Sequence record: NC_019538.1
Reading direction: 5' to 3' (one strand)
Length of the DNA stretch: 64,000 nt
Shown: positions 1,997 through 49,200 of the stretch, in pieces
Layout of the letters: the number at the start of each line of letters is the position of its first letter
Position numbering within the stretch: position 1 is the stretch's first letter
Made by a program: the position numbers and the translations under genes
The notes under the pieces: model-generated
Database searches by the model: none
The model's input: only the letters and a program-made list of their open reading frames with translations
What the model was told of the DNA's origin: nothing

Positions 1997-2011
1997 TATA
2001 TTGCCCCTATG

Positions 2012-2037
2012 AAAAAGCCACCCCGTAGGATGGCTTT
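2012..2037 (-). terminator. hairpin terminator with cUACGg loop between genes 34 and 35
   Basis: Minus strand reads AAAGCCATCC-TACG-GGGTGGCTTTTT. Confidence 0.7.
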
Positions 2038-2043
2038 GTTTTA

Positions 2044-5000
2044 TTAACTGATCCAAACAAAGTCAACAGACTTGGTAGTTGGGTTTGCTCTTATTTCTAA
2101 GAATTCCCCGTTACCAACTGCTATCCTAAGTTTATTTACGGTTGTTGTTCCATTCAGGTTAGAATCACCATTTACGGTTAGTGCTTTCACCGAATTGATG
2201 ATAAGCTCACCTGTCATGGTATCACCGCCCTTAAACACACGAGAACCAGATGTAGTATTCATATCGTCTATCACGGAATCCAGATAGTCTTTACGAATTG
2301 CATCATCAGGGTCAATCGGTAATGCACTTCCTATCTTAACTTGAGCATTTACCTTTAAGTCACCATTTGATTCAAACGATGATGTATTGGATGGCGAAGA
2401 TAGACCGTTAGGGCGAATTTGTAATCCACCAAGAGAACCAATATTCAAACTCTCGTTTGAGTTTATGGTTATCCCACTCTTAGAAGTATTACCCATCCAT
2501 ATGTTTTGAACACCACTGTTCTTAAAATATGTAGTATTAACAAAAGTTTTGCTTCCGGTAATAGTTTCTGCGAAGTTACCCGGTCCACGAACATATCTTT
2601 CTTCTGCATAAGCAAAACGAACAAGGTGATTTCCTGACGTTGGGTTCTGTCCGCCGTTTTGAACTTGGTTGGTGAATATTGCGTTACCATCACGTTCGAC
2701 AGTAAAGATCCTATAGTATCTACTGTTTTCGTCCATTGCGTTAAGGATTAATGGACCATCAATCGTGTTTACACCAAGATCCAAAAACGCATTGCTACCC
2801 TGACGTTTCCACTGGATCATGGATACATGAGATGTAGTCGATGTTTCGTTGAGGTAGAAATAAGGTCTAATCTTCTCAATAGACGGATTTGCAGTAAACG
2901 TCATTTCACCGGTTATTGTTTGTGCAATAGTACGACGAACCCAATCAGTTGAAGGTATACGGTTTCCACCAACCTCCATTGCACTGGCACTTACAGCCAC
3001 CGCTTTTAGTGGTAGGAAATTGGCTAATGCTGTATTCAAACCTCTTGGGGAAACCAATACATCCCCGTGTGCATAACCGGTTAATGCTCTTGTAGAACCA
3101 AGAATATCATTACCTTCAAACACAGAGTTGGCGGAGTTGTTGTTTGACAATATCGCAGTAATACCAACACCATATCTGGTATCCGTCATTCTATATCCTG
3201 CACTATTTCTAGAGCTGGTCAGAGCGGTTAACGGGGTTAGATATTTTGTGTTGTTAGTACCGGTATCAACCTCAGATTGAGTTGCAATTTGCGACAAACC
3301 AGTTTGGGTTGTAGTTGCCAACCTAGCACTCAGTTTCTTTGGAGTTACGATAATTTCGTCATTTGCGGTTCCGGTCATATCGTTTACTTCGATCTGAGTT
3401 GCAATTCTCGCAGTACCTCGTTGTGACTCAGTAGGAATAACGATATTAAAAGATTGACCTTCCCAGATGTTACCAACTGTTCTAAGTCCTGCTGTATCAA
3501 ATACAGTCAGTCTTTCTCTAGCCAACCAATTACCAAATGTTTTTGGAGTAACAAACCATTTGTCATGTAATGTCCCTGCATCTACTTCCGCTTGTGTTGC
3601 GGTTTCGGACAAACCCCAACGGGCTTCCGTTGCAGTTCTGCTTACAAGTCCTTTTATGCTAACGTGTACGTTGTCACCAGCCGGTGGGGTGTTGCTAAGT
3701 ACTTCTGCGGCGGTTGCAGCCCTTGACAACCCGGTTAGTGATGCTGTAGCCTGACGTCCTTCTAGGGTGGTCGCTGTTACTACTAACGCACCAGTTGCGG
3801 TGTCAGCAGTACCTGTGTTAACCTCCCCTTGGTTGGCAATGTACACCATACCTTGTGAAAACTCAGTTGCATTTTTCTCAAATAGAGTTTTCGGAGTGAT
3901 TACCTTGCTATGATCGTTATAATCATAAACACCTGTACCCGGAGTTGTTCTTGTGGTAGGCTTAGTTCCATTAGCTGAGACAAGAGCCGATAAACCAGTC
4001 ATAGACTCGGTGGCAACTCTACCGTTTAGGGTAGATGGTGTGATTGCAACTTGAGCCCAGTTTTCACCAGAACCGGATTGTGCGTTTGCTTGACTCTGTG
4101 TCGCTACCTTCAACAACCCACGCATTGTTGTTGTAGATAGACGGTCGTTTAACAGGAACGGGCTTATTGCCACCCCAGACCATGCTTCATCGGATAGGTT
4201 TCCACTAACTGCCTTGGATTCGCCATTAGATGCATATCGGGTGATACCACGACGGACGGTACTTGCCGTTTTATTAGCCAATGTTTCTGCGGTAACAAAA
4301 TCCTCACAATCTGGGTTTTGACCGGTGGTGATCTCTTCTTTGTTCTTGTTTACAGATGCTTGAGAAGCAATAGCAGCCATACCATAAAATTCTGGTACAT
4401 TGCGGTCTACCCGATACGGAATCTCCGACATAGTAACAACAGACCAAACGTCTTTACCAGAACCCAGAGCATTTGTGAAGTACACAAATTCCCACTGTTC
4501 CCCCCGGTTTTGGATATCAAATGACTGAGTTTTTACGGTCTTTGATTCCATATTAGCGAGAAAATCACGATACGAGCTGATCCGTGGATTCATCAACGTA
4601 TTTCCATCCGGAACAAAGAAATCATTTGTGCTGGTTGCGTCGATGTTTAAAGTTAAAGTAGAACCCCTTTTCATGTATCGTGTGTCTATAAAGAAGCTAT
4701 CACCTCTTGCAGCATCGCGGGGGAATGTAATGTTGACAGTCGAGGGTGTTTCAGTATAAACTACTAGTCGGTCGTTTGGTTGACCCAAGTATGTAGATGT
4801 TTTAACGCTTTTCCAACGACTATAGCTATCAGAATCAAAAACTCGCCATGCGTTGAGGGTTGAATCAAAGACAAACATACCCCAATCAGTAGAATCGAAA
4901 ACAACCGTTTTCATTGGGGTCGATCCGTATTCAACTATGATGTTGTGGCTACTACCCGGATGAACGTTTACGGTTGTCTTTGTTACTGGGTTATTACCAT

Positions 5001-5736
5001 CAAGGTCATATGTGGTAATGGTATCACCGTTTCTGGCGAATTTTGGTAGTTGGATCTTAATTCCACCTGCATATCTGGTTTCTCTCATCAACTGATCGCC
5101 AACAATGGATTTATAATATCCACCTGCTGGGTATGACTTGTTGCTAATAAATGATTTGTTTACATCACCAGCGTATTCAGTTTGAACAAACCATTCACTA
5201 CCATTCAAAATGAAGTAGTTGGATGAATTTTTGGCGGTAATTTTATAAGAAGCCAAACCGGAAATAGTTCTTCCATTACCAGAAACATCTATGGTATAAT
5301 CGTGAAGATTAGAACCATTATCTCTGATAACAATAACGTCCCCATTAAGGGCATTAGTTGGTAGGGTAAATGTTACGTCACTACTTATGGTCTGTGCCAA
5401 GATGTGATCGCCAGCAGAAAGATTTGTCAACGCTGGTGCATTAGTCGTAACCAGCTTCCAACTTGGGTCTGTACGTACTGGTTTCCATTTTACCGGGTTG
5501 AATGCCTCTGGTGAGGTTATATCAACTTGACTTAGGTATATGCGGTTATCATAGATAACAGCAAAGTTTTTGTCGTATGTTCTAGTTGCGTCATATAGTT
5601 GGATTGTGTTTTCTTGTACAAAGAAATCGACACTCACACCATCCATCTTTGAGTTAATATCGGGATATCCGACGTTAACTATTTTTTGACCTGCGGCATC
5701 TAAGCCGTCGGTAACGCGAAACGGAATTGAAGACAT
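2044..5736 (-). CDS. 34: long tail fibre proximal subunit gp34
   Basis: 1230 aa. N-terminus FRVTDGLDAAGQKIVNV, internal ATExRxG / ATQxEVxxG / VTPKTL repeats, divergent from rnh as in T4. Confidence 0.95.
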   Translation of the reverse strand: MSSIPFRVTDGLDAAGQKIVNVGYPDINSKMDGVSVDFFVQENTIQLYDATRTYDKNFAVIYDNRIYLSQVDITSPEAFNPVKWKPVRTDPSWKLVTTNAPALTNLSAGDHILAQTISSDVTFTLPTNALNGDVIVIRDNGSNLHDYTIDVSGNGRTISGLASYKITAKNSSNYFILNGSEWFVQTEYAGDVNKSFISNKSYPAGGYYKSIVGDQLMRETRYAGGIKIQLPKFARNGDTITTYDLDGNNPVTKTTVNVHPGSSHNIIVEYGSTPMKTVVFDSTDWGMFVFDSTLNAWRVFDSDSYSRWKSVKTSTYLGQPNDRLVVYTETPSTVNITFPRDAARGDSFFIDTRYMKRGSTLTLNIDATSTNDFFVPDGNTLMNPRISSYRDFLANMESKTVKTQSFDIQNRGEQWEFVYFTNALGSGKDVWSVVTMSEIPYRVDRNVPEFYGMAAIASQASVNKNKEEITTGQNPDCEDFVTAETLANKTASTVRRGITRYASNGESKAVSGNLSDEAWSGVAISPFLLNDRLSTTTMRGLLKVATQSQANAQSGSGENWAQVAITPSTLNGRVATESMTGLSALVSANGTKPTTRTTPGTGVYDYNDHSKVITPKTLFEKNATEFSQGMVYIANQGEVNTGTADTATGALVVTATTLEGRQATASLTGLSRAATAAEVLSNTPPAGDNVHVSIKGLVSRTATEARWGLSETATQAEVDAGTLHDKWFVTPKTFGNWLARERLTVFDTAGLRTVGNIWEGQSFNIVIPTESQRGTARIATQIEVNDMTGTANDEIIVTPKKLSARLATTTQTGLSQIATQSEVDTGTNNTKYLTPLTALTSSRNSAGYRMTDTRYGVGITAILSNNNSANSVFEGNDILGSTRALTGYAHGDVLVSPRGLNTALANFLPLKAVAVSASAMEVGGNRIPSTDWVRRTIAQTITGEMTFTANPSIEKIRPYFYLNETSTTSHVSMIQWKRQGSNAFLDLGVNTIDGPLILNAMDENSRYYRIFTVERDGNAIFTNQVQNGGQNPTSGNHLVRFAYAEERYVRGPGNFAETITGSKTFVNTTYFKNSGVQNIWMGNTSKSGITINSNESLNIGSLGGLQIRPNGLSSPSNTSSFESNGDLKVNAQVKIGSALPIDPDDAIRKDYLDSVIDDMNTTSGSRVFKGGDTMTGELIINSVKALTVNGDSNLNGTTTVNKLRIAVGNGEFLEIRANPTTKSVDFVWIS

Positions 5737-39840: not shown

Positions 39841-39877
39841 TTTATCTTCCTTTAATAGTTTACAATGGTATTTAGAG

Positions 39878-39911
39878 AAAAGCCCCGAACGAATAAACGA
39901 ACGGGGCTTTT
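39878..39911. terminator. terminator hairpin at the end of the wac operon
   Basis: AAAAGCCCCG ... CGGGGCTTTT. Confidence 0.7.
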
Positions 39912-39913
39912 AA

Positions 39914-40057
39914 TTATTGTTCTTTATTTTTGTTAGCCTCTTTATCTTCTTCATTCTGCTTCTGTTTTTTGGTGATTGCTTCCGCCGCCACCTTAAGCAA
40001 CTGAGTTAGAATTTCGAGACCTATTGTCCTAAAGAATAAAAGTACAGCGGTTTGCAT
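39914..40057 (-). CDS. small amphipathic/charged peptide (47 aa)
   Basis: Read by hand: MQTAVLLFFRTIGLEILTQLLKVAAEAITKKQKQNEEDKEANKNKEQ; AAGGGG SD. Confidence 0.6.
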   Translation of the reverse strand: MQTAVLLFFRTIGLEILTQLLKVAAEAITKKQKQNEEDKEANKNKEQ

Positions 40058-40068
40058 TTTAATGCCCC

Positions 40069-41565
40069 TTAAGATATTTGGATCCTAGTTGAGCGAGTGG
40101 TTACTTGACCATAACTGTTCTTATAAATGGCGTAATAGAAAATTGATGTGTCGAGGGTTGGGGTAACTTCTATCTCTAGATTTTTAGAATTACCTACTTC
40201 AACACCCCTTGAGGTTTTCCATTGAACCGTGGAAAATCTATCACAATCCGATTCTATCACAACCGTATCACCAACTTGCGCGTTATATATAACTTGTGGT
40301 TGTTTCGTTATTTTAGGCGCAACCGTACTCCACCAAATTGTATCACCGACGATATCAAGAACCAGTTTTCCATCAGTAGATACCAATTTTCCATTACCCT
40401 GATTTGAAATATTAAATAGATGACTGTTTCCATCCATGTAAATTTCAAATTGTTCAATGGTGATGTTATTACTATTTAACCCGAATACAGTATTGAGCCC
40501 TGTATCAAGACTAAGATATGGATCTGTTATTCTTGCGTAGACTTCACCGTTTACATACAACCTTATATTTTGAGCAAATCCGTTAGATACATCAAACCAA
40601 ACGGCCACACCAATACTGTTATTTCTTGGTAATGGTCTTTTCAATGGTTTGGTATGATAAACACCATCAGGAGTTTTAACCCAGAATGTGTTAGTTTCTA
40701 GATTTATGCCCATACCAGTAGAAATATCACCAACGTTTTTTGAAGCTATCACTAGTTCTGTAGCGATATCGCCAATAACAAGGCCACCAGAAACTTTATG
40801 TGTCTTGTTCGCAACCATCAAAGAACCAGTGGTAGAGAATCCAGCGTCTCCATTTAAAATGATTGCTTCGTTGGTTAAAACGTGAGGGGTTGGTTGATAA
40901 TCAATCAGGATATTTGTATTTGTAACCATAGGTGAATCAAAAGAGAAATCACCATTTGTGTTATATCTAACTCCAACACCAAAGTTAAATTGTATTAGAC
41001 AGTCTTTCTTTGCGGTAAAAGTAGAGTATATACGGGTTCTCTCTTCACCAATTAATGGATTATTATCAAATTTCGTTTTGAATGTTAGATAATTATCAAT
41101 GGGTTCCCCATTATCCATGTATATATCAGCAAGTACACCACTATGAACCAACGTAAGATCGTTGTTTTTAACCATAACACTTGCGGTATAAGTTTTTCCA
41201 GCCTTTAACGAAATACGGGTTTGGAAGAACATTCGACTATCAATAGTTCTGAATGTATATCCTTTCGTATTTTCATTATCTTGGTTGAAGCTTATAGCAA
41301 AAGCATTATTTCCCGTATTTGTCGAGTTATTATAAACGGTATAGCAGGGTGGAACGTTTCCAATAACAACCCCGTCAGAATAACAAAAAATATCAGTACC
41401 ATTCAACATTCGACTATTTGCTAATAGGTTTTCGTCTCCAAGATCATAAGCTCTATGCCATGCCCCATTAGAAAAAACCCACGGTACGGATCTATGCCAG
41501 TTATTTTTATAAATGGATGGGATGGTGTCATGCACCACCCCATTTTTATACACTTTGTTAGCCAT
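40069..41565 (-). CDS. multidomain virion adhesin candidate (fibre-tip-type N-terminus, CBM/ConA-like modules, C-terminal Ig-like domain)
   Basis: N-terminal KVYKNG..IYKNNW...WVFSNGAWHRAY; ENLLANS; VAVWFD..IRLYVNGEV; APKITKQP..VGDTVVIE..VQWK..YYAIYKNSYG Ig pattern. Confidence 0.6.
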   Translation of the reverse strand: MANKVYKNGVVHDTIPSIYKNNWHRSVPWVFSNGAWHRAYDLGDENLLANSRMLNGTDIFCYSDGVVIGNVPPCYTVYNNSTNTGNNAFAISFNQDNENTKGYTFRTIDSRMFFQTRISLKAGKTYTASVMVKNNDLTLVHSGVLADIYMDNGEPIDNYLTFKTKFDNNPLIGEERTRIYSTFTAKKDCLIQFNFGVGVRYNTNGDFSFDSPMVTNTNILIDYQPTPHVLTNEAIILNGDAGFSTTGSLMVANKTHKVSGGLVIGDIATELVIASKNVGDISTGMGINLETNTFWVKTPDGVYHTKPLKRPLPRNNSIGVAVWFDVSNGFAQNIRLYVNGEVYARITDPYLSLDTGLNTVFGLNSNNITIEQFEIYMDGNSHLFNISNQGNGKLVSTDGKLVLDIVGDTIWWSTVAPKITKQPQVIYNAQVGDTVVIESDCDRFSTVQWKTSRGVEVGNSKNLEIEVTPTLDTSIFYYAIYKNSYGQVTTRSTRIQIS

Positions 41566-41576
41566 CGTAAACCCTT

Positions 41577-44500
41577 TTAGTTGATGAATTCGAAGAACAC
41601 ATCACCTTCTTTAGGACTGGTCGGTGCGTCTGTAGCAAAATCACCGTAGTAATAAGCTCTTGTCCACTGACCATCTTGTCTTACGTACTTGTTTCCGTCT
41701 GCTGGTGCTTCGAAACTATCCTTTGTGAGGACTTTATCGTTATTGATTGTTACCTCAGATGCGGTAATACGAACCGGTAGACCGGTATCACCAATTGCGA
41801 TAAACTTTTCTGTAGAAGGTTGCGATATACTAATTATGTTCTTATCGACATTATTTACCCGTGTGGTAATACCGAAACTATTATTAGCACCTACTTCTGC
41901 AAGCTTGAGGTTAGTTACCTTACCGTCAAACTTCATGAACGTTCTACTATCACCAATAACCATTAGCTTATCGACGCCAACTGTATCTACCTTGGCTACG
42001 TTATATCCACCAATGATGAAATCGCTGGTTTCACCAACAGAAACATCCTTGGTTGGGTCTATACCGTCATGGATTAGAGTCCATTGTCCACCCTTACGAG
42101 CGTAGAAATTAGCGTTGTTTGGTGCGTCGTGTGCATCGGTCCAAACTTTCTTAGCATCAGAACCAACACCAACAAACAGATTACCAGTAGAATATACACT
42201 CACTGGTGTGGCTGTGTCGCCGATCACTATTTTGGTTTGGGTACTTTCTAAAAGAGACCCATAAGATGTAGAAATTTTACTTTCTAATTTGAAGTCGGAT
42301 ACAGTACCACGAAGGTTTATTTTCCCTGTGGTTCCACCAATTCGAGTTGTTACGGTTGCAGAGTCAACCGTAAATGCAGTAATCGTACCACTATTGGTTT
42401 TTGCCATTATAGATACGTTTTCTGCTAGGGTTATATTCCTTTCACCAACAGCTTGCCAGAAACCAACACCATCGTCATTAACCCGAGCGTATGCCAATCC
42501 GGATTGTGGTGCATCACCGATAATACCAGTACCAGACCCACCCTGTTCAACGACCATCCATTGGTTGTTCTTACGAGCGTAAAAACTACCATCTGCGGGT
42601 GCGTCCATGCCTTGGTGCCAAACCTTAAACCGGTCTACCCCAGTGCCTTGAATATAAAGATCCGTTGCAAATACGTTAGTAGTTTCAACATCACCATATG
42701 TCAGTATCCCACCAAAGTTATTGACCACGTTTAGATGTTTACCCATACCAACATTCATCTTAAACGCTTTATCTTGGTCCATGACCAATTCGCTAACTTT
42801 ACCCTTGAATGCAAGGTTTGTATTAGCAGAACCAATATTTATTGTGGTGTTATCTAATTTAATAACATCTGCACCAGCATAACCAATTACCGCATTTTGG
42901 TTTAGGGTAAATCCATTCTCTGGGTTGACGTCGGTAATATATTTTTTATAGTTCCCGATATGCAGAACATCAAATTCGCCGGTTGGTGTGTTATATTTGA
43001 AAGAATCGATGTCCTTACCAACCATAACTATATTCTTATCACTCTGACCAACTTTTATAGTTTGATCGGTAGAACCAAGAATAGTTTTCCCATATTTTCT
43101 GATATCAGAGGTTGTATCAAGAGAAATATTTCCGATAATGTCACCGACGATACGGAGTTTGGTTGTTCCGTTGTGACCAAAGGTCGGGATATATTTCCCA
43201 TCAGAACCAGTAGAATAAGAAACAAGGGTGGTCCCGTCGATAGCGGTAATCTTATTGTTATCACCAACCACAAAGTTAGTGGTAAAAAGGTCTCTCCACA
43301 CCCAGTTAGCACCATCATATTCTCGCGACCATACAGAACCAAGACGAGTTTCTGTTGGGTTGGGAATGTATCCAGCACCATTCTTATAATCGCGGTACAT
43401 CTGTTCATACATATCTTTCGATGCTTGATATGAACCAATTCTACGGTAATCGTCGTCGGCGACGTTTTTTGTCCCCTCTACCTTGATAACCAAACCTGTG
43501 TTTGGATTACCTACGGTATTTTGTAGATCCTCAATAGAAGTTCTATATTCGACGTTAACAGTAGTTGATATACTCGAAACACGACCATCAAGATCTTCGA
43601 AATGTTCTTTCTCTCTCTGGTCTACTTCTTTAACTTTTCCCTGCAATCCATCCAGAGGACTAGACCCTAGAATACCTTCGTTATTCTCCATACGGACACG
43701 AAGATCATTAATTCTACCCCAAGCGGTGGTATCCAGTGTGGAATCACTAGCAGAACCAAGAGAACGAGCCAAGTCATCAGACAGACCTTCGGTTTGTTTG
43801 GCGATGCCACTAATATAATCCACGTCTTTCTTGACATGTAAAGAATAATCGTATAGATTACCTACTGTTTGATAAGAATCTGTTTGTACATCAAGGTATT
43901 GAAGAGGGAATTCACCGTATCCAGTGTGTTCTACAAGTTCTTGAACTAAAGGTGAATTTGTTTCGTCAGCCATTTCTAAATCGCTGATACGAGAATAAAT
44001 GTTCCTAGTTGGATCCGGGTCTTGTCCAAGTTCGGTTCTAATCTGGTTAACTTCTTCCCTCAAAGATGCAGGGGTGGAGTCTTCCCACCATTTTTCAAGA
44101 GAAGTAACGCGAACATCAAGATTAACTCCTGTGTTATAGTTACGTTCGATTTGACCTTTTACCCCAGAAGAAAGTGAACCGGGTGATGGAACTCCATCAA
44201 TATCAAAATCTTTATAATTACCCAACATTTTTTTGATATGAAGGTCATCTGCTCGGAGAGTTCGGAATCTAAGAGATGGATCACCAACTCCGATATTATC
44301 TGAAATTGACTGGATTTTTGCGTCGAGGATCACGTCGGTTTCTTTGATGTCTTCAAGGATCCCACTATGGACATCCATTTCTGTTTCCAAATCGCCGACT
44401 CGTTGATATAAATCTCGTCCGTCACCAGCATTAATTATATCATCATGAATATTCACCTTGTCGATAACTTCCGACATCTTAGAAAGGATTGTTTCTTGGT

Positions 44501-44702
44501 TTTTATCCAATGTCTCTACGTTAGCAGAAATTTGAGTAGAGGGGCGGTTTAAAACGCCCCCTTTATCACCAACAATAGTCGGATCCGCACCTTGCGGTTG
44601 CTCACCATTTTTAATCCATTCAACCTGTTTTTGACCAGAACCAGCAACAGGCATATCAGAAGTATATTTCAGGTCATCCAATACAGGTTTAATAATTTCC
44701 AT
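41577..44702 (-). CDS. wac: fibritin (Wac), greatly extended, 1041 aa
   Basis: L.Y..D.P..G.GQ.Q.EWIKNGE...GA...G.LNRP, segmented coiled coil, foldon-like motifs; located between genes 12 and 13. Confidence 0.92.
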   Translation of the reverse strand: MEIIKPVLDDLKYTSDMPVAGSGQKQVEWIKNGEQPQGADPTIVGDKGGVLNRPSTQISANVETLDKNQETILSKMSEVIDKVNIHDDIINAGDGRDLYQRVGDLETEMDVHSGILEDIKETDVILDAKIQSISDNIGVGDPSLRFRTLRADDLHIKKMLGNYKDFDIDGVPSPGSLSSGVKGQIERNYNTGVNLDVRVTSLEKWWEDSTPASLREEVNQIRTELGQDPDPTRNIYSRISDLEMADETNSPLVQELVEHTGYGEFPLQYLDVQTDSYQTVGNLYDYSLHVKKDVDYISGIAKQTEGLSDDLARSLGSASDSTLDTTAWGRINDLRVRMENNEGILGSSPLDGLQGKVKEVDQREKEHFEDLDGRVSSISTTVNVEYRTSIEDLQNTVGNPNTGLVIKVEGTKNVADDDYRRIGSYQASKDMYEQMYRDYKNGAGYIPNPTETRLGSVWSREYDGANWVWRDLFTTNFVVGDNNKITAIDGTTLVSYSTGSDGKYIPTFGHNGTTKLRIVGDIIGNISLDTTSDIRKYGKTILGSTDQTIKVGQSDKNIVMVGKDIDSFKYNTPTGEFDVLHIGNYKKYITDVNPENGFTLNQNAVIGYAGADVIKLDNTTINIGSANTNLAFKGKVSELVMDQDKAFKMNVGMGKHLNVVNNFGGILTYGDVETTNVFATDLYIQGTGVDRFKVWHQGMDAPADGSFYARKNNQWMVVEQGGSGTGIIGDAPQSGLAYARVNDDGVGFWQAVGERNITLAENVSIMAKTNSGTITAFTVDSATVTTRIGGTTGKINLRGTVSDFKLESKISTSYGSLLESTQTKIVIGDTATPVSVYSTGNLFVGVGSDAKKVWTDAHDAPNNANFYARKGGQWTLIHDGIDPTKDVSVGETSDFIIGGYNVAKVDTVGVDKLMVIGDSRTFMKFDGKVTNLKLAEVGANNSFGITTRVNNVDKNIISISQPSTEKFIAIGDTGLPVRITASEVTINNDKVLTKDSFEAPADGNKYVRQDGQWTRAYYYGDFATDAPTSPKEGDVFFEFIN

Positions 44703-44735
44703 TAGTTTTTACCCCATTCGTTTATATATTAGTAT

Positions 44736-46091
44736 TTAGGTTGTTTGGTATATGTCATTAACACCCCAAACATGCCATATAATACAGTTGTCACCCGTGG
44801 TATGGAAATAAGTACCATTGGCGTTAAACCTACCAATCCACCAAGTAGAATCGGTGTCCGCAATCCACCAAGCGTTGGCGAAATTATCTTGAAGGATAGA
44901 AATTTGAGCCTTTGATATATAGTTAGACTTCATATGTCTACCATCATCCCCAGAGGATACAACTATTAACCCATCGTAATTCCACCACGGCTGTGACATA
45001 TTAAAGTCACCACTTTTATGACCGCCATATGGAGCAGCATTAAAAATCAATTGTCTATCAGTTCTATTAAGAGTTACTGCACTTCCACGATTAACCTTTC
45101 CATTTATTTGGTTTTGTTTATCCTCAAATGCTCCAACCGCCCAATCATATCTCACAACCGCATTAGGTGAACCATCTTGGGGATTTGTAAGATATATATT
45201 TGGGGTAATCAACGCACCGGTCATTGTTCCACCGGTTTTTGCAACTAAGGTTGTTGCTCCATGAGAACTTAACGCTTTATTCGTTGCCCCTTGTACAGCA
45301 ACGTCTGTCAATGCAACAATACCCCACTGGGAAGACGATGCAATCGGAAGAGTTGCGGGGCTAATGGCTACGTCAGTTGCAGTACGGGCATTAGACTCGG
45401 CTTGCGTTGCCATTTTTACTGTACCAACTCTTGATTGAGTTGCACGAGTCTCAATAAAGCCTTTCGGACTAACTGCTACACCGTTATGCAAAGCCGCATT
45501 GATTACTGGGGATGGGGAAATCTTAACTATCCCAGAGGTCAATTCAGTTGCGCCAGAATTTGCAGTAACTGCAAACTTATCTATCATTGCCTTAACAACA
45601 TCAGGACTTGTTGCAGTAGTTGAATCAGTCCCTTGTTGTCCAATGGTAATCGTGGATAATTTCAACGTACCGGCTTTTGTGGTAGAACCGATTGCTTTTG
45701 TTCTGATGATATCCCATATACCAGCCGTATTAATGCCTATAGAGGCGCTTGCTGCTGTTTCTAGACGTTCCGCGCTGGTAGCGTACCTAACTAGACCCTT
45801 AACCGTTTCTGATGCGTCTGGGCGCACCCATTTGGCTTGTAAGGTCTTGGGGGTAACGATTGCATCAGCCACTGTTCCTGCCAATACTTCCGCTTCCGTC
45901 GCAATCCTGAGAATACCCATTTTTGTTTCGGTCGCTTTCATATCCTCATACCTTCCAATTGCATGGGGTTGTATGAGTTCAGCCATTTTTTGTACATCTT
46001 TAGTCGTTGCTGGGAAATTAGTGGTGCTAGGATCTAGCACCACATCAACAGCTTTAGAACTAATATGTTGTTCTGTATTATTAATCATCAT
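44736..46091 (-). CDS. 12: short tail fibre gp12
   Basis: NNT.QHIS..A..V.LDP..TNFP....DVQ; ATETKMG.LRIAT repeats; divergent C-terminal domain. Confidence 0.9.
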   Translation of the reverse strand: MMINNTEQHISSKAVDVVLDPSTTNFPATTKDVQKMAELIQPHAIGRYEDMKATETKMGILRIATEAEVLAGTVADAIVTPKTLQAKWVRPDASETVKGLVRYATSAERLETAASASIGINTAGIWDIIRTKAIGSTTKAGTLKLSTITIGQQGTDSTTATSPDVVKAMIDKFAVTANSGATELTSGIVKISPSPVINAALHNGVAVSPKGFIETRATQSRVGTVKMATQAESNARTATDVAISPATLPIASSSQWGIVALTDVAVQGATNKALSSHGATTLVAKTGGTMTGALITPNIYLTNPQDGSPNAVVRYDWAVGAFEDKQNQINGKVNRGSAVTLNRTDRQLIFNAAPYGGHKSGDFNMSQPWWNYDGLIVVSSGDDGRHMKSNYISKAQISILQDNFANAWWIADTDSTWWIGRFNANGTYFHTTGDNCIIWHVWGVNDIYQTT

Positions 46092-47062
46092 TAACCAATC
46101 CTTTTCCAGTAATAAAGTGTTGTTACCGTGGTATCAATTGCGACTTTATCTTCTTTGAAAAACATTTCCCAATATCCGTAACCATAAGATGCAGGAGATC
46201 CAACAACCCAATCGACGGTCATCCCATATTCAGACCATGGTTCTGGTGTATGATCACGAAGATCTCTATATGTGAAGTTTATAGAATCACTAGAAAGTTT
46301 AGTAACATCCCTCACATATAAACCATCTACTTCAAATTGTTTAAGTAAGTCGAATACTTTATCTCTAACAAATGTCGGACTTACACCATCTGCAACTTCA
46401 ATTCGAGTACCAAACACATCAAGAACAACAGGCATACCAGAAATTGGAGATGAAATAGCACCAGAAAAGGTTAATGTGTCGATTTGTGGTTTTCCGCTTG
46501 GGTCTGTATTATCTATATTTATGATGACAGAACCTTTATTAAGTCTTCCCACATATGCAGCATCGGAAATTGCGTTTTCAACTGTCTTGAACTTGTTATG
46601 ACTTCTGGCATCTTGGATTGTTAGGTTACCGATACCACCAACAACAGATAGTGTCTCTAATGTCGGGTCTCCATTAAACTCATGGTCTGATGCTTTCCGG
46701 CTCTTAATCATAGAAGCCATTCGACTTCTAGTCATATCTGTGTTTGTTCTACCGTCAAACATAGTCACGGTTACAACAGACGAATCCAAAGAACTTAGTT
46801 CCGCACCTGACGTGGAATTAACTTCTTTAACACGACATCTGAAATAACCATGATTATATGATGCGTTTGATGGAAGAACCCTTAGATTATCAGTTGCCGC
46901 ACTAGCATCAACAACAGCAGTCCAAGCATTGCTATCTACGGAAGATTCCCAAGAATATCTAAGTTCTGCATCTACGTTGTTTGTACTTGCTAAAATAGAA
47001 AGCTGGTAGGAACTACCAGCATAATATGTTAGGCTTCTTGGTTGTTGAAAAATACTTATCAT
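46091..47062 (-). CDS. 11: baseplate wedge / tail pin gp11 with an N-terminal Ig-like domain
   Basis: C-terminal two-thirds match gp11 (SRKASD, ENAISD, QID...FSG, VFG..I, GYG.W, YYWKRI); ATG 47062 overlaps the gene 10 stop. Confidence 0.85.
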   Translation of the reverse strand: MISIFQQPRSLTYYAGSSYQLSILASTNNVDAELRYSWESSVDSNAWTAVVDASAATDNLRVLPSNASYNHGYFRCRVKEVNSTSGAELSSLDSSVVTVTMFDGRTNTDMTRSRMASMIKSRKASDHEFNGDPTLETLSVVGGIGNLTIQDARSHNKFKTVENAISDAAYVGRLNKGSVIINIDNTDPSGKPQIDTLTFSGAISSPISGMPVVLDVFGTRIEVADGVSPTFVRDKVFDLLKQFEVDGLYVRDVTKLSSDSINFTYRDLRDHTPEPWSEYGMTVDWVVGSPASYGYGYWEMFFKEDKVAIDTTVTTLYYWKRIG

Positions 47063-49200
47063 TATTCTACCCTTAGCCATCTATGGGCGGTGGTTGTAGG
47101 TTGGATCACAGAGAACGGGTTTACTGTTTCGTTTGGTCTGGTATAGACATAATCCTCTCTGTATTTCTTATAACCCGGACCACTCTCGTCTGGGTCGTAT
47201 TGACACCCACCAACAAGAACATCACCATTCGGATCTGCAATAAGCGCCTTTTCCGTGCTTTTTGTTCCGGGGGTGTTATCAACCGCAAGGGTTACGTCGT
47301 TTTCACCAAAAATACTACCGGCACTGTGTCTTGGTTGTCCGTTAATATCCAAATCTTGGTTATTCAGACCGTATATCGGGTCGTTTGGATTCTGACTATT
47401 CCACCCAGCAACAACCTTACCCTCTGCCCAACGAACCCAAGTACCAATCCCCATATAGGTTGCTGGGTTGTTCGGGTTATGTGCGTTTTCGTAGATAGTA
47501 CCAACTGGATAAAACATATCAAACAGCATTGCAATAGAGTTTGCAGGAACGTTGATCAAATCGTTAGGATCTGGTTGTACTGTCTTTGGGGTTGGATTGA
47601 AAGGATCGGAATATCTAATTTTCCCGGTCAAAGTAACAGGAACAGTATTGATATACTTTTTGTCTGTCTCTTTGATAATATCGTCAAGTTCAAGCAACGA
47701 ACCAATATCATTATTAAACCAACGAATCGTAATAACGTCTTCATGGTTGAACGGTTCGTTCACCACGATATCACGCATATAACCGTTCTCATCTTCGATA
47801 GGTCCAAAATCAACACCGGTAGGAACCCAAACACCACCATTAGCAATACAAGATTCTTGAGTTAAGCTATCCGCACCTTCACAAGTAAAAAACGGTATAT
47901 CGCCCTGTCCAGATTTAACCAATTGACGACCGTTGACAATCATCTCTAGAGTTTTTGGGTTAAAAGTCTCACTCGGTTGGAAGCCGAATTCGGAAAGGTT
48001 GAATCTAAATTTAGCAGACAGATCACCAACAAACCGACGTCCAGTTTCAGAAACATAATCAACAGGAACATATTGATCAGAATAAACCCGAATAGTCGCA
48101 GTTTCGTAAGAACTTCTATATGTAGCCAAACCATCTAAGAAAGTTTCGATAACAACAACATCACCAGCTTCACATGGCTTTTCTAGCTTAATGGTATATC
48201 CATCAAGGTCTGTTATTTTACTAACACCAACATAGTATGAAAATTTTGTTGCTATTTTCATTTGAGCTAGAATGTCGGGGGTTTCATTCACAGAAACATA
48301 TTCGCTGGTCAGTTTATCAAATTTCATGAGGTATGTTTTATCGTTATAAACACACACCAGACGGTCTTCGTTAAGTGGTTTCTTATTAAGGTCGAATTTT
48401 ATGTATGTCTTTTTATCAGATTCTTTAGAATAGAAAGATACTACAGTATTCCCTTCAACTGTTCCAAACCTAGTTCCCTTACCAACAATAGTACCCCATC
48501 TATCGCTATCGATTTTTACCGGGTTAATATCAATCTTGGCTGGGTCTGCAACAGTCTTTTGAACAATAGAACCATAGTTTGATTCGGGACCGTATTCCTG
48601 ACCGTAATAAAGAATGTTACCGCGCTTATATACGTTAATCGAGTTTCTGTTATAACCAGACGAGAATATATTTTGAAAATCGGTTTGACCTTCGGTTGCA
48701 ATAAATTCTTTTTTAGCAACGGTTGCTATGTCGTTGGATCTAATTTCACCAACATATTTACTTGGTACATAATCCCAGTTACCGGGAGAGCAATATACAA
48801 GTTCAACGTCCATGAAATTGTTTTCTAATCTGTGTGTACCAGAAGACCCTTTGATGGTATTAAATCCACCGGGAACCAGAATTACAGGGTTTCCGCCCCA
48901 AGTTCCCATTACATCACGAACACGAATAACCTTACCATAATCGGCTGGTGTCCCACTCGGAAGATTGACAGTAATACGACCGGTTGTTGTATTAATTACC
49001 CAAGCCTGACCCATAATAGCTGAGAGAGTTTTTGTGTGGTCGCTATATGGTTTCCATGCACCGGCAGCATGAGGAATGTTACCATCCCCCAAGTTGTAGT
49101 AAAGTTCATTAAAGTTGTCGTTTGTCTTCTGACCACCTTTTCTAAGGTAATCACCGGTTCCGTCATCAACACGATTACCAATAATAATTTGCTGTTTCAT
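47062..49200 (-). CDS. 10: baseplate wedge subunit gp10
   Basis: MKQ.I.IGN.VDDGTGDYLRKGGQK.N.NF.ELYY.LGDG, YPVGTIYEN..NP.NPATYMG.GTW. Confidence 0.95.
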   Translation of the reverse strand: MKQQIIIGNRVDDGTGDYLRKGGQKTNDNFNELYYNLGDGNIPHAAGAWKPYSDHTKTLSAIMGQAWVINTTTGRITVNLPSGTPADYGKVIRVRDVMGTWGGNPVILVPGGFNTIKGSSGTHRLENNFMDVELVYCSPGNWDYVPSKYVGEIRSNDIATVAKKEFIATEGQTDFQNIFSSGYNRNSINVYKRGNILYYGQEYGPESNYGSIVQKTVADPAKIDINPVKIDSDRWGTIVGKGTRFGTVEGNTVVSFYSKESDKKTYIKFDLNKKPLNEDRLVCVYNDKTYLMKFDKLTSEYVSVNETPDILAQMKIATKFSYYVGVSKITDLDGYTIKLEKPCEAGDVVVIETFLDGLATYRSSYETATIRVYSDQYVPVDYVSETGRRFVGDLSAKFRFNLSEFGFQPSETFNPKTLEMIVNGRQLVKSGQGDIPFFTCEGADSLTQESCIANGGVWVPTGVDFGPIEDENGYMRDIVVNEPFNHEDVITIRWFNNDIGSLLELDDIIKETDKKYINTVPVTLTGKIRYSDPFNPTPKTVQPDPNDLINVPANSIAMLFDMFYPVGTIYENAHNPNNPATYMGIGTWVRWAEGKVVAGWNSQNPNDPIYGLNNQDLDINGQPRHSAGSIFGENDVTLAVDNTPGTKSTEKALIADPNGDVLVGGCQYDPDESGPGYKKYREDYVYTRPNETVNPFSVIQPTTTAHRWLRVE

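What the first reader, a model, noticed from the sequence alone, without database searches (positions are those of the whole stretch)
40069..44702. Whisker turned receptor fibre? Five-foldon Wac plus a dedicated lectin/Ig tip protein
Seen: Wac is 1041 aa. After the coiled coil come five foldon-like motifs (GYIPNPTE..VWSR..W about 43300-43380; DAPADGSFYARKNNQW about 42550-42606; DAPQSGLAYARV..FW about 42450-42518; DAPNNANFYARKGGQW about 42072-42128; EAPADGNKYVRQDGQW about 41655-41711). These are interleaved with xxIGxxxxxxxxxG beta-repeats, two copies share CTTACGAGCGTA at DNA level, and the protein ends APTSPKEGDVFFEF. The next gene begins with a W-rich KVYKNG..NNW..WVFSNGAW segment, followed by CBM/ConA-like and Ig-like modules. 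Known: T4 Wac is 487 aa with one foldon, variable Wac C-termini have been described in T4 relatives, and gp38-type adhesins dock on fibre tips via W-rich N-termini. Inference: a modular collar fibre about twice normal length carrying a separately encoded adhesin, i.e. a third host-sensing apparatus besides the long and short tail fibres.
Basis: partly seen in the sequence, partly recalled or inferred. Interest (0 to 1): 0.7.

Follow-up and report, generated by a model that had tools for sequence, protein, structure and literature searches.

The report
Long phage whisker with lectin-like partner
Aeromonas phage CC2 has a double-length collar whisker and a co-transcribed lectin/Ig-like partner; this "Aeh1-type fibritin" pair is already described, with the partner published as a folding helper, and whether it also sits on the whisker tip as an adhesin is untested.

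Summary
The window is Aeromonas phage CC2. wac (41577-44702, minus strand) encodes 1041 aa. Residues 1-475 are a complete T4-like fibritin with collar-binding N-terminus, coiled coil and a diverged foldon. Residues 476-1041 are an all-beta extension of three homologous tandem modules with four clear foldon-like motifs. The next gene (40069-41565) encodes a 498-aa all-beta protein with a conserved Trp-rich N-terminus, two lectin-like jelly-roll domains and an Ig-like domain.

The pair is not new. It is the "Aeh1-type fibritin" of Letarov & Krisch (PMC3797505). They reported that the Aeh1 orthologue of the partner (gp218) is needed for soluble trimeric fibritin, called it a chaperone, and had already suggested a host-recognition role for this whisker.

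New here:
- Extension and partner occur in the same 41 phage records, always adjacent.
- The best-conserved stretches are Wac's last 45 aa and the partner's first 60 aa.
- The partner's predicted fold resembles displayed carbohydrate-binding proteins; it matches no fibre-chaperone or gp38 family.
- Both genes are under strong purifying selection and do not track host range among close isolates.

Best reading: a folding helper that stays on the tip, as T2 gp38 does. This is unproven, and a helper absent from virions remains a serious rival.

The parts
41577..44702 (-). wac: Aeh1-type long fibritin, 1041 aa
   Evidence: ORF and translation. Full-length match to phrog_9687 'fibritin neck whisker' (1620 bits). 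Annotated wac in CC2.
44487..44702 (-). N-terminal collar-attachment domain, aa 1-72
   Evidence: phmmer aligns aa 7-72 to T4 fibritin residues 4-66 (E 5e-11). Mean pairwise identity across six divergent phages is 0.44.
43383..44486 (-). Segmented coiled-coil shaft, aa 73-440
   Evidence: aa 7-408 align to T4 fibritin 4-396 (E 4e-26). phrog_1056 covers aa 4-408.
43278..43382 (-). Diverged first foldon, aa 441-475, at the end of the T4-like part
   Evidence: Pfam Fibritin_C covers aa 388-474 against profile 6-92 of 93 (E 4.3e-10). Not found by the profile built from the other copies.
41580..43277 (-). 566-aa all-beta extension, aa 476-1041
   Evidence: tblastn finds it only in 41 phage records, all under wac. 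AF2 secondary structure is all beta, but the model confidence is poor.
42537..43025 (-). Repeat module A, aa 560-722, ending in foldon-like motif 2
   Evidence: hhalign A vs B: probability 99.2%, E 8e-20. A vs C: 98.1%, E 8e-14.
42063..42515 (-). Repeat module B, aa 730-880, from motif 3 to motif 4
   Evidence: hhalign B vs C: probability 98.6%, E 1e-15, aligned start to start.
41643..42128 (-). Repeat module C, aa 859-1020, from motif 4 to motif 5
   Evidence: hhalign.
42552..42608 (-). Foldon-like motif 2, aa 699-717 (DAPADGSFYARKNNQW)
   Evidence: Part of the aa 700-745 match to foldon tags. Contains one copy of the 12-mer.
42450..42518 (-). Foldon-like motif 3, aa 729-751, with a 4-residue insertion
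42072..42131 (-). Foldon-like motif 4, aa 858-877
   Evidence: Contains the second copy of the 12-mer.
41655..41714 (-). Foldon-like motif 5, aa 997-1016, the copy closest to the T4 foldon
   Evidence: Aligned to the T4 foldon in the PDB search. Pfam Fibritin_C positions 72-91, 20.2 bits. Only part of the AF2 model with pLDDT 65-74.
41580..41642 (-). C-terminal tail, aa 1021-1041. Together with motif 5 it is the best-conserved stretch of the protein and the proposed partner-binding tip.
   Evidence: The last 45 aa have mean pairwise identity 0.52 across six divergent phages, against 0.19-0.28 for the modules. 0 of 45 sites vary in nine close isolates.
40069..41565 (-). Partner gene, orthologue of Aeh1 gp218, 498 aa
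   Evidence: ORF. Full-length match to phrog_9363, unknown function. 38% identical to Aeh1p218. Starts 11 nt after the wac stop.
41368..41565 (-). Partner N-terminal region, aa 1-66: Trp-rich, three predicted beta-hairpins, proposed docking or recognition segment
   Evidence: Best-conserved part of the partner: 0.58 for aa 25-60. W29 and W36 are invariant. Low pLDDT as a monomer. Weak likeness of aa 29-44 to Wac aa 1006-1021.
40891..41367 (-). Partner domain 1, aa 67-225: beta-sandwich / jelly-roll
   Evidence: AF2 pLDDT about 80-90. Foldseek hits to CBM- and lectin-bearing proteins.
40330..40872 (-). Partner domain 2, aa 232-412: ConA/LamG-like beta-sandwich
   Evidence: AF2 pLDDT about 83-92. 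Foldseek hits to laminin LG pairs, sialidase lectin wings and phage 'ConA-like lectin/glucanase' proteins. Pfam Laminin_G_3 only E 0.56.
40072..40317 (-). Partner domain 3, aa 417-498: Ig-like (Ig_3 / I-set type)
   Evidence: The profile of the partner family matches this region to multi-Ig proteins, which carry Pfam Ig_3 and I-set. The S13 orthologue hits Ig_2 at 5.7e-8. AF2 pLDDT about 85-93. Absent in the VmeM-32 orthologue.
39914..40057 (-). 47-aa ORF, last gene of the unit
   Evidence: Annotated in CC2. phrog_20541, E 2e-33. Small ORFs sit at this position in relatives.
39872..39911 (-). Intrinsic terminator hairpin plus U-run closing the wac-partner-orf47 unit
   Evidence: RNA fold -19.6 kcal/mol, z -5.9, 0 of 200 shuffles as good.
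44732..44739 (-). Late-promoter-like CTAAATAC box upstream of wac
   Evidence: 9 copies in the window against 2.9 expected, with 0 of 100 shuffles reaching 9. Minus-strand copies lie just upstream of gp15, gp13, wac and gp9, and none lies between wac and the partner.

Best explanation
This is the CC2 member of the 'Aeh1-type' fibritin system.

The whisker. Residues 1-475 of Wac are an ordinary T4-like whisker: a collar-binding N-terminus, a trimeric coiled coil and a diverged foldon. A 566-residue beta-structured extension is appended to it. The extension arose by tandem triplication of a module of about 130-150 residues. Each module junction carries a foldon-like hairpin motif, which most likely re-registers and clamps the three chains along the fibre.

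The unit. wac, the 498-aa partner and a 47-aa ORF form one late transcription unit.

The partner. Its conserved Trp-rich N-terminus most likely recognises the equally conserved last ~45 residues of Wac (terminal foldon-like hairpin plus tail). This contact lets the long beta part fold and trimerise, as was reported for the Aeh1 orthologue. I infer that the partner then stays bound as the distal subunit of the whisker. There it would display two lectin-like jelly-roll domains and an Ig-like domain that make weak, broad contacts with a conserved surface glycan. This is the same logic as the T2/S16 gp38 helper-plus-adhesin, built from unrelated folds.

Status of each step. Shown: gene structure, repeats, motifs, homology to the Aeh1 pair, co-occurrence and conservation pattern. 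Published for the orthologue: dependence of fibritin folding on the partner. Inferred: the binding site, retention in the virion and glycan binding.
For: - Fibritin identity. Synteny gp12-wac-partner-gp13 in CC2, 65, Aeh1, S13, VmeM-32 and Ci1.
- Tandem modules: hhalign probability 98-99%, E 1e-14 to 1e-20, with a coiled-coil control at E 0.35-0.81.
- Foldon-like motifs.
- Orthology to Aeh1 Wac and gp218. The same 41 records hold both genes, always adjacent.
- Only about 7 full-length representative clusters of the partner exist among 1.84 billion proteins.
- One transcription unit: promoter-like box before wac, an 11-nt gap between the genes, and a terminator after orf47.
- Co-conserved ends: Wac last 45 aa at 0.52 and partner aa 25-60 at 0.58. 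Conservation falls along the partner: D1 0.32, D2 0.28, Ig 0.22.
- Partner model: pLDDT 77, three beta domains, a disordered N-terminus as a monomer. Foldseek hits are to CBM, lectin, LamG and Ig proteins. The Ig assignment is supported.
- No match to gp38, Tfa or other fibre-chaperone families.
- Relatives add further fibre-like genes after the partner, with PTR repeats (S13, Ci1) and a weak BclA_C-like end in Ci1. This suggests a chain of structural subunits.
- Literature: co-expression of Aeh1 fibritin with gp218 gives soluble, SDS-resistant oligomers. RB43-type fibritins carry Ig-like domains fused at the whisker tip (PMC3797505).
Against: - No virion proteomics, EM or binding data exist for any member.
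- The authors who worked with the orthologue call it a chaperone and do not report co-purification.
- The partner is nearly invariant among nine isolates from A. hydrophila, A. salmonicida and A. dhakensis: 8 of 498 variable sites, pN/pS 0.04. No site separates isolates with different reported host ranges.
- It diverges more slowly than the distal long-tail-fibre protein: 68% against 49% identity to phage 65, and 38% against 25% to Aeh1.
- Lectin assignment is at fold level only, with low TM-scores of 0.17-0.29. The Pfam Laminin_G_3 hit is not significant, E 0.56.
- The likeness between the Wac C-end and the partner N-end is marginal: E 0.014 among 1191 six-frame pieces for CC2, and weaker in relatives.
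- The monomer model of the extension failed, pLDDT 39, so its architecture is not established.
Confidence: 0.5

Rival explanations
1. Pure assembly chaperone. The partner binds nascent Wac chains, helps the long beta extension trimerise, then dissociates and is absent from virions, as T4 gp38 is for gp37. The whisker tip is the bare Wac C-terminus.
For: - This is the published conclusion for the Aeh1 orthologue: fibritin is insoluble alone and soluble and oligomeric when co-expressed with gp218 (PMC3797505).
- Strict co-occurrence, co-transcription and co-conserved ends fit a dedicated chaperone equally well.
- Strong purifying selection, with no host-range-linked variation.
Against: - A 498-aa protein with three beta-sandwich domains (two lectin-like, one Ig-like) matches no fibre-chaperone family in Pfam, PHROGs or the PDB.
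- Conservation falls from the N-terminus to the distal domains, and the Ig domain is lost in VmeM-32. This is more typical of a displayed distal subunit.
- Relatives encode additional fibre-like proteins directly after it.
Confidence: 0.3
2. The long whisker acts only in long-tail-fibre handling and environmental sensing, as in T4. The extension simply reaches a different site on this phage's tail fibres, and neither Wac nor the partner touches the host.
For: - The T4-like part (collar domain, coiled coil, foldon) is fully retained.
- The phage has long-tail-fibre genes: gp34 at 2044-5736, followed by a 1259-aa fibre protein.
- Wac and the partner evolve under strong constraint, as expected for a virion-internal contact.
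Against: - Lectin-like and Ig-like surface domains on the partner have no obvious role in binding another phage fibre.
- Letarov & Krisch note a tail-fibre-like organisation and argue for host recognition.
- Nothing here tests the fibre-fibre contact.
Confidence: 0.12
3. The partner is a virion protein that sits elsewhere, on the collar, neck or head as a Hoc-like decoration, and its link to Wac is only genomic.
For: The gene lies between wac and the neck genes gp13 and gp14. It has an Ig-like domain of the class seen in phage decoration proteins.
Against: Aeh1 fibritin folding depends on gp218. The partner is found only where the Wac extension is found. The Wac C-end and partner N-end are co-conserved.
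Confidence: 0.05

Closest known systems
Aeh1-type fibritin with downstream gp218 (Letarov et al. 2005; Letarov & Krisch 2013, PMC3797505)
   Same: - Same gene pair in the same position.
- CC2 Wac extension is 29.7% identical over 100% of its length to Aeh1 Wac (E 2e-70).
- The partner is 38% identical to Aeh1p218 over 98% of its length (E 4e-97).
- About twice T4 length, with a tail-fibre-like beta C-terminal half.
   Different: - CC2 and phage 65 belong to other genera (Ceceduovirus, Ishigurovirus).
- They lack the third gene (gp219 family) and the partner's short C-terminal extension.
- Folding dependence has not been tested for CC2.
T2/T6/S16 gp38 adhesin on the long-tail-fibre tip (my knowledge of the literature; not retrieved here)
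   Same: The proposed logic: a separately encoded protein, made from the gene after the fibre gene, needed for fibre maturation and then carried on the fibre tip as the binding module.
   Different: - No sequence or family relationship: no Pfam or PHROG gp38 hit and no PDB hit.
- Different predicted folds, beta-sandwich lectin and Ig domains.
- It belongs to the collar whisker, not the long tail fibre.
- Low variability among isolates, unlike host-range adhesins.
T4 gp38 / gp57A / Tfa-type tail-fibre assembly chaperones (my knowledge)
   Same: Needed for folding of a trimeric fibre, and encoded next to it (the published reading of gp218).
   Different: Much larger and multi-domain, with no family match.
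JS98-type fibritin with two foldon motifs (PMC3797505)
   Same: More than one foldon-like motif in a single fibritin.
   Different: In JS98 the spacer is coiled coil and the protein folds unaided. Here four further motifs punctuate beta modules, and a helper gene is present.
RB43/KP15-type fibritins with C-terminal Ig-like domains (PMC3797505)
   Same: Ig-like domains associated with the whisker's distal end.
   Different: There they are fused to Wac. Here the Ig-like domain is on the separately encoded partner, behind two lectin-like domains.

Membership tests
Fibritin (Wac) of T4-like phages | Conserved N-terminal collar-attachment domain | tested here: met
   aa 7-72 align to T4 fibritin 4-66 (E 5e-11).
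Fibritin (Wac) of T4-like phages | Long segmented coiled-coil shaft homologous to T4 fibritin | tested here: met
   aa 7-408 align to T4 fibritin 4-396 (E 4e-26). phrog_1056 at 8e-70.
Fibritin (Wac) of T4-like phages | Foldon at the end of the coiled coil | tested here: met
   Pfam Fibritin_C at 40 bits, above the 21-bit cut-off, covering aa 388-474 to profile position 92 of 93. The copy is diverged.
Fibritin (Wac) of T4-like phages | Gene located between gp12 and gp13 | tested here: met
Aeh1-type fibritin system (Letarov & Krisch) | About 2x T4 length, with a C-terminal extension homologous to that of Aeh1 Wac | tested here: met
   1041 aa. The extension matches Aeh1 wac over 100% of its length (E 2e-70). 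Full-length match to phrog_9687.
Aeh1-type fibritin system (Letarov & Krisch) | gp218 homologue immediately downstream of wac | tested here: met
   38% identity over 98% of the length (E 4e-97). Adjacent in all loci inspected.
Aeh1-type fibritin system (Letarov & Krisch) | Fibritin folding and trimerisation depend on the downstream protein | not testable with these tools
   Reported only for Aeh1, as unpublished data cited in PMC3797505.
gp38-type tail-fibre adhesin (T2/S16) | Sequence or profile homology to gp38 | tested here: not met
   No gp38 family among the Pfam hits even at E<=10, none in PHROGs, and no PDB hit.
gp38-type tail-fibre adhesin (T2/S16) | Bound to the fibre tip in the virion through its N-terminal domain | not testable with these tools
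   Only indirect evidence: conserved partner N-terminus and Wac C-terminus.
Tail-fibre assembly chaperones (Tfa, gp57A, T4 gp38) | Membership of a known chaperone family | tested here: not met
   No such Pfam or PHROG hit.
ConA-like lectin / LamG superfamily (partner domains 1-2) | Jelly-roll beta-sandwich fold with a significant family match | tested here: inconclusive
   Foldseek E 3e-7 to 1e-4 against CBM, lectin and LamG proteins, but TM-scores of only 0.17-0.29 for the whole chain. Pfam Laminin_G_3 at E 0.56, 10.8 bits against a 27.6-bit cut-off.
Ig-like domain (Ig_3 / I-set type; partner aa 417-498) | Profile match to Ig-domain families | tested here: met
   The partner-family profile matches multi-Ig proteins over aa 414-498 (E down to 1e-16), and these carry Pfam Ig_3 and I-set. 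The S13 orthologue hits Ig_2 at 33.3 bits, above the 27-bit cut-off. The CC2 protein itself has no direct Pfam hit.

The most novel reading that the evidence does not exclude
The collar whiskers of this phage group are a third, segmented receptor-binding fibre. A T4-like coiled-coil stalk is followed by a triplicated beta shaft clamped by foldon-like hairpins. The shaft is capped by a separately encoded lectin/Ig subunit that acts both as folding helper and as glycan adhesin. In relatives (Aeh1-like phages, S13, Ci1 and a metagenomic contig) the fibre is lengthened by one to three more fibre proteins encoded between the partner and gp13.
Probability: 0.35. Interest if true: 0.65.

Novelty: new member of a known kind. 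Interest (0 to 1): 0.4.

Why it matters
If the partner really caps the whisker, T4-like phages of Aeromonas, Cronobacter, Citrobacter and Vibrio would carry a glycan-binding fibre set on the collar, in addition to long and short tail fibres. This would bear on how these aquaculture- and food-relevant phages first contact cells or mucus. It would also give a second, structurally unrelated example of the helper-that-becomes-adhesin principle known from T2 gp38. The repeated foldon-like clamps are of interest as natural trimerisation units placed inside a fibre rather than at its end. If the partner is only a chaperone, the finding is an ordinary member of a system described in 2005-2013.

Tried and rejected
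- AF2 monomer model of Wac aa 476-1041 with a 6-sequence alignment: mean pLDDT 39, unusable, so no fold search was run on it.
- A multimer prediction of the Wac tip with the partner N-terminus could not be run. The tool predicts one chain and accepts only window or database sequences.
- Idea that the partner N-terminus is itself a foldon-like copy: only marginal support. The all-copies profile gives E 0.057. The terminal-copy profile gives E 0.014 for CC2 and 0.8-8 for relatives, although always at the same position. Kept as a hint, not a result.
- Idea that the partner's short C-terminal extension in Aeh1, S13 and Ci1 is the docking site for the third gene product: weakened by contig L011. 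There the partner has a long extension but no third gene follows.
- Host-range association: no residue of Wac or the partner separates AS-zj and AS-sw (which lyse A. hydrophila) from AS-szw and AS-yj.
- Literature searches for virion proteomics or EM of whiskers in CC2, P19, VmeM-32, phiAS5, S13 and LPCS28 found nothing relevant.
- Letarov et al. 2005 (PMC545706) is not held.
- The sigma-70 promoter scan was uninformative, 11 sites against 15.8 expected.

Full report
IDENTITY OF THE REGION. The 4.6-kb stretch is 100% identical to Aeromonas phage CC2 (NC_019538; Straboviridae, Ceceduovirus). It is 96.5-96.8% identical at DNA level to 13 further Aeromonas phage records. In CC2 the genes run on the minus strand in the classical T4 order: gp9, gp10, gp11, gp12, wac, a 498-aa 'hypothetical protein', a 47-aa ORF, gp13, gp14, gp15.

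CHECK OF THE OBSERVATION. The two ORFs are 1041 and 498 aa.
- The PDB search aligns aa 998-1014 with the foldon of T4 fibritin and of many foldon-tagged fusion proteins. It aligns aa 700-745 with foldon tags.
- Pfam Fibritin_C positions 72-91 match aa 998-1017 at 20.2 bits, against a cut-off of 21.
- The 'first' foldon (aa 441-475) is much more diverged. It is covered by the significant Fibritin_C hit (aa 388-474, profile 6-92 of 93, E 4.3e-10). A profile made from the other copies does not recognise it in CC2, although it recognises the same site in S13 and Ci1.
- The shared 12-mer occurs exactly twice, against 0 expected.
- The 'IG-x9-G' strings occur six times in aa 476-1041 and never in aa 1-475.
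- The C-terminus and the Trp-rich partner N-terminus are as described.

ANATOMY OF WAC. Residues 7-408 align with T4 fibritin residues 4-396 (E 4e-26), and the Pfam foldon region follows. So residues 1-475 are a complete T4-like fibritin, and 566 residues have been added behind its foldon. I cut the family alignment of six divergent Wac proteins (CC2, 65, Aeh1, S13, Ci1, VmeM-32) into modules and compared them profile against profile. A (aa 560-722), B (730-880) and C (859-1020) are homologous, with probability 98-99% and E 1e-14 to 1e-20. A coiled-coil control gives E 0.35-0.81. The extension is therefore a tandem triplication of a unit of about 130-150 residues, with a foldon-like motif at each junction and an extra one after module A. 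An AF2 monomer model of the extension failed (pLDDT 39). Only the last 45 residues reached pLDDT 65-74. The failure may reflect an obligate trimer, but the alignment had only six sequences, so it is not evidence for one.

ANATOMY OF THE PARTNER. An AF2 model built on 16 sequences has mean pLDDT 77. It shows:
- a poorly defined N-terminal 66 residues (three hairpins);
- a beta-sandwich at aa 67-225;
- a second beta-sandwich at aa 232-412;
- an Ig-like domain at aa 417-498.

Foldseek against the PDB returns multi-domain carbohydrate-active or lectin-bearing proteins: a cellulosomal arabinoxylanase with CBMs, Vibrio cholerae sialidase with its lectin wings, laminin LG4-5 pairs and galactose oxidase. 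E-values are 3e-7 to 1e-4, but whole-chain TM-scores are low. Against viral models it returns the orthologues, then phage proteins labelled ConA-like lectin/glucanase or LamG-like jelly-roll.

The Ig assignment is firmer. The family profile matches multi-Ig proteins over aa 414-498, and these carry Pfam Ig_3 and I-set. The S13 orthologue passes the Ig_2 threshold.

The CC2 protein itself has no significant Pfam hit. No gp38, Tfa or other chaperone family is matched in Pfam, PHROGs or the PDB.

WHAT IS ALREADY KNOWN. Letarov & Krisch 2013 (PMC3797505), citing Letarov et al. 2005, define eight fibritin C-terminal types.
- The 'AehI type' is twice the length of T4 gpwac, with a long fibrous domain that 'mimics the structure of many phage tail fibers'.
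- It is followed by gp218, found in all Aeh1-related genomes.
- Aeh1 fibritin expressed alone was insoluble. Co-expressed with gp218 it was soluble, trypsin-resistant and formed SDS-resistant oligomers (unpublished data). They concluded that gp218 is a chaperone.
- They also argued that this fibritin takes part in host recognition.
- They describe JS98-type fibritins with two foldon motifs, and RB43-type fibritins with one to three Ig-like domains at the tip.

CC2's extension and partner are clear orthologues of Aeh1 Wac and gp218: 29.7% identity at E 2e-70, and 38% at E 4e-97. The finding is thus a member of a described system, and its central idea has been voiced before.

NEW COMPARATIVE EVIDENCE.

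(a) Co-occurrence. tblastn with the extension and with the partner finds the same 41 of 50,697 phage records (Aeromonas 35, Cronobacter 4, Citrobacter 1, Vibrio 1), always adjacent. In 1.84 billion representative proteins the partner family has only about seven full-length clusters. Metagenomic members sit in the same gp12-wac-partner-gp13 context.

(b) One unit. A CTAAATAC box lies just upstream of wac. The box is enriched (9 copies against 2.9 expected) and on the minus strand it sits in front of gp15, gp13, wac and gp9. None lies before the partner, which starts 11 nt after the wac stop. A strong terminator hairpin follows the 47-aa ORF.

(c) Conservation polarity. Across six divergent phages the best-conserved stretch of Wac is its last 45 residues, at mean pairwise identity 0.52. 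That is higher than the collar-binding domain (0.44) and the modules (0.19-0.26). The best-conserved stretch of the partner is aa 25-60 (0.58). Conservation then falls to 0.32, 0.28 and 0.22 in the three domains, and the Ig domain is missing in VmeM-32. This fits a conserved Wac-tip to partner-N-terminus contact with more freely evolving distal domains.

(d) Constraint. In nine close isolates from three Aeromonas host species, pN/pS is about 0.04 for both genes. The partner has 8 variable residues, and the Wac tip and the Ig domain have none. No residue separates the isolates reported to lyse A. hydrophila from those that do not.

(e) Rate. The partner diverges faster than neck genes but more slowly than the distal half of the 1259-aa long-tail-fibre protein.

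Identity of CC2 proteins to close isolates, ZPAH1, phage 65 and Aeh1 ('-' = not computed):

| Protein | Close isolates | ZPAH1 | Phage 65 | Aeh1 |
|---|---|---|---|---|
| Partner | 99% | 74% | 68% | 38% |
| Distal long-tail-fibre half | 98% | 78% | 49% | 25% |
| gp13 | - | - | 79% | 56% |

(f) Growth of the module. Aeh1, phiAS5, PX29, Ahp1 and avDM12 have a third gene of 201-207 aa. S13 and Ci1 have a 403-aa and a 315-aa gene sharing its N-terminal ~78 residues, followed by phage-tail-repeat segments; Ci1 also has a weak BclA_C-like end. One metagenomic contig has three further genes of 133, 902 and 347 aa.

INTERPRETATION. The facts fit a whisker whose beta shaft needs the partner to fold, through recognition of the conserved terminal hairpin plus tail by the partner's conserved N-terminus. 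Whether the partner then leaves or stays is open.

I favour staying, at about 0.5. A 55-kDa protein made of two lectin-like sandwiches and an Ig-like domain matches none of the fibre-chaperone families I could search. Its conservation gradient is that of a distal subunit. Relatives append more fibre-like genes behind it. Another fibritin type carries Ig-like domains fused at the same place. T2-type gp38 is a precedent for a protein that is both helper and tip adhesin (my knowledge of the literature).

Against this stand the published label 'chaperone', the complete lack of virion data, and the low variability. If the partner binds anything on the host, the target is conserved rather than a strain-specific receptor. 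The pure-chaperone rival gets 0.3. A T4-like role limited to tail-fibre handling gets about 0.1. A location elsewhere on the virion gets about 0.05.

NOVELTY AND SCORE. This is a new member of a known kind. The added value is the module and motif anatomy, the fold assignment of the partner, and the comparative statistics. None of these settles the function. Interest 0.4.

DECLARATION OF A SLIP. Early in my private reasoning, before any tool had shown it, I wrote out from memory a stretch of the T4 foldon. Later I wrote two short motif strings that I recalled from other phage fibre proteins. All likeness to the T4 foldon reported here rests. I stopped doing this once I noticed it, and nothing was deleted.

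Noticed in passing
L003:7594-8199, L007:4397-5002, L008:5025-5630, L009:5114-5737, L010:5094-5699, L004:7550-8761, L006:7512-8459: A third gene follows the partner in Aeh1-like phages (201-207 aa), in S13 (403 aa) and in Ci1 (315 aa). All share an N-terminal domain of about 78 aa (phrog_23703). The S13 and Ci1 versions add phage-tail-repeat segments, and Ci1 has a weak BclA_C-like end. This updates the 2013 statement that Aeh1 gp219 has no homologues and may be a pseudogene. CC2, 65 and VmeM-32 lack this gene.
   Followed up: partly
L013:5001-11054: A metagenomic relative has a 603-aa partner followed by genes of 133, 902 and 347 aa before gp13. The wac-gp13 interval appears to be a growth zone for extra fibre-like genes.
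   Followed up: no
window 39914-40057 (-): A conserved 47-aa ORF (phrog_20541) closes the wac-partner unit. Its N-terminal half is hydrophobic and its C-terminal half is Lys/Glu-rich. Small ORFs of 49-66 aa occupy the same place in Aeh1, VmeM-32 and metagenomic relatives. Function unknown.
   Followed up: partly
window 1-5736 (-); L024:8218-15737: The long-tail-fibre locus is gp34 (1230 aa, window 2044-5736) followed by a single 1259-aa protein annotated 'gp35'. After that come a 39-aa ORF, a homing endonuclease and the nrd genes. No gp36, gp37 or gp38 genes lie next to it.
   Followed up: partly
window, 9 sites (e.g. 38088, 39868, 44732, 50165, 57915, 63352 on the minus strand): CTAAATAC is enriched: 9 copies against 2.9 expected, with 0 of 100 shuffles reaching 9. 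On the minus strand it sits just upstream of late structural genes. It is probably this phage group's variant of the T4 late promoter. The T4-type TATAAATA is not enriched (9 against 6.3).
   Followed up: partly
window 46091-47080 (-): gp11 is 329 aa by ORF (323 aa as annotated in CC2), but the baseplate-wedge profile covers only aa 116-328. The N-terminal ~115 aa weakly match a different 'virion structural protein' family (phrog_25852). This extension is absent in S13 gp11 (212 aa).
   Followed up: no
alignment A1, columns 520-563 (Aeh1, S13, Ci1, P0006, P0007 orthologues): Some partner orthologues carry a 20-45-aa extension after the Ig domain with a repeated Thr-Glu-x-Gly-like pattern. It co-occurs with the third gene in the sequenced phages, but not in metagenomic contig L011.
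   Followed up: partly
Aeromonas phage Ah1 (MG250483 / NC_055733), hits H90/H91: In this record wac is annotated as two CDS (wac_1, wac_2), and the tblastn match comes in two pieces. That is one break in the gene or in the assembly.
   Followed up: no
L008:6970-7653: Phage PX29 has a Seg-like GIY-YIG homing endonuclease inserted between gp13 and gp14, next to the wac module.
   Followed up: no
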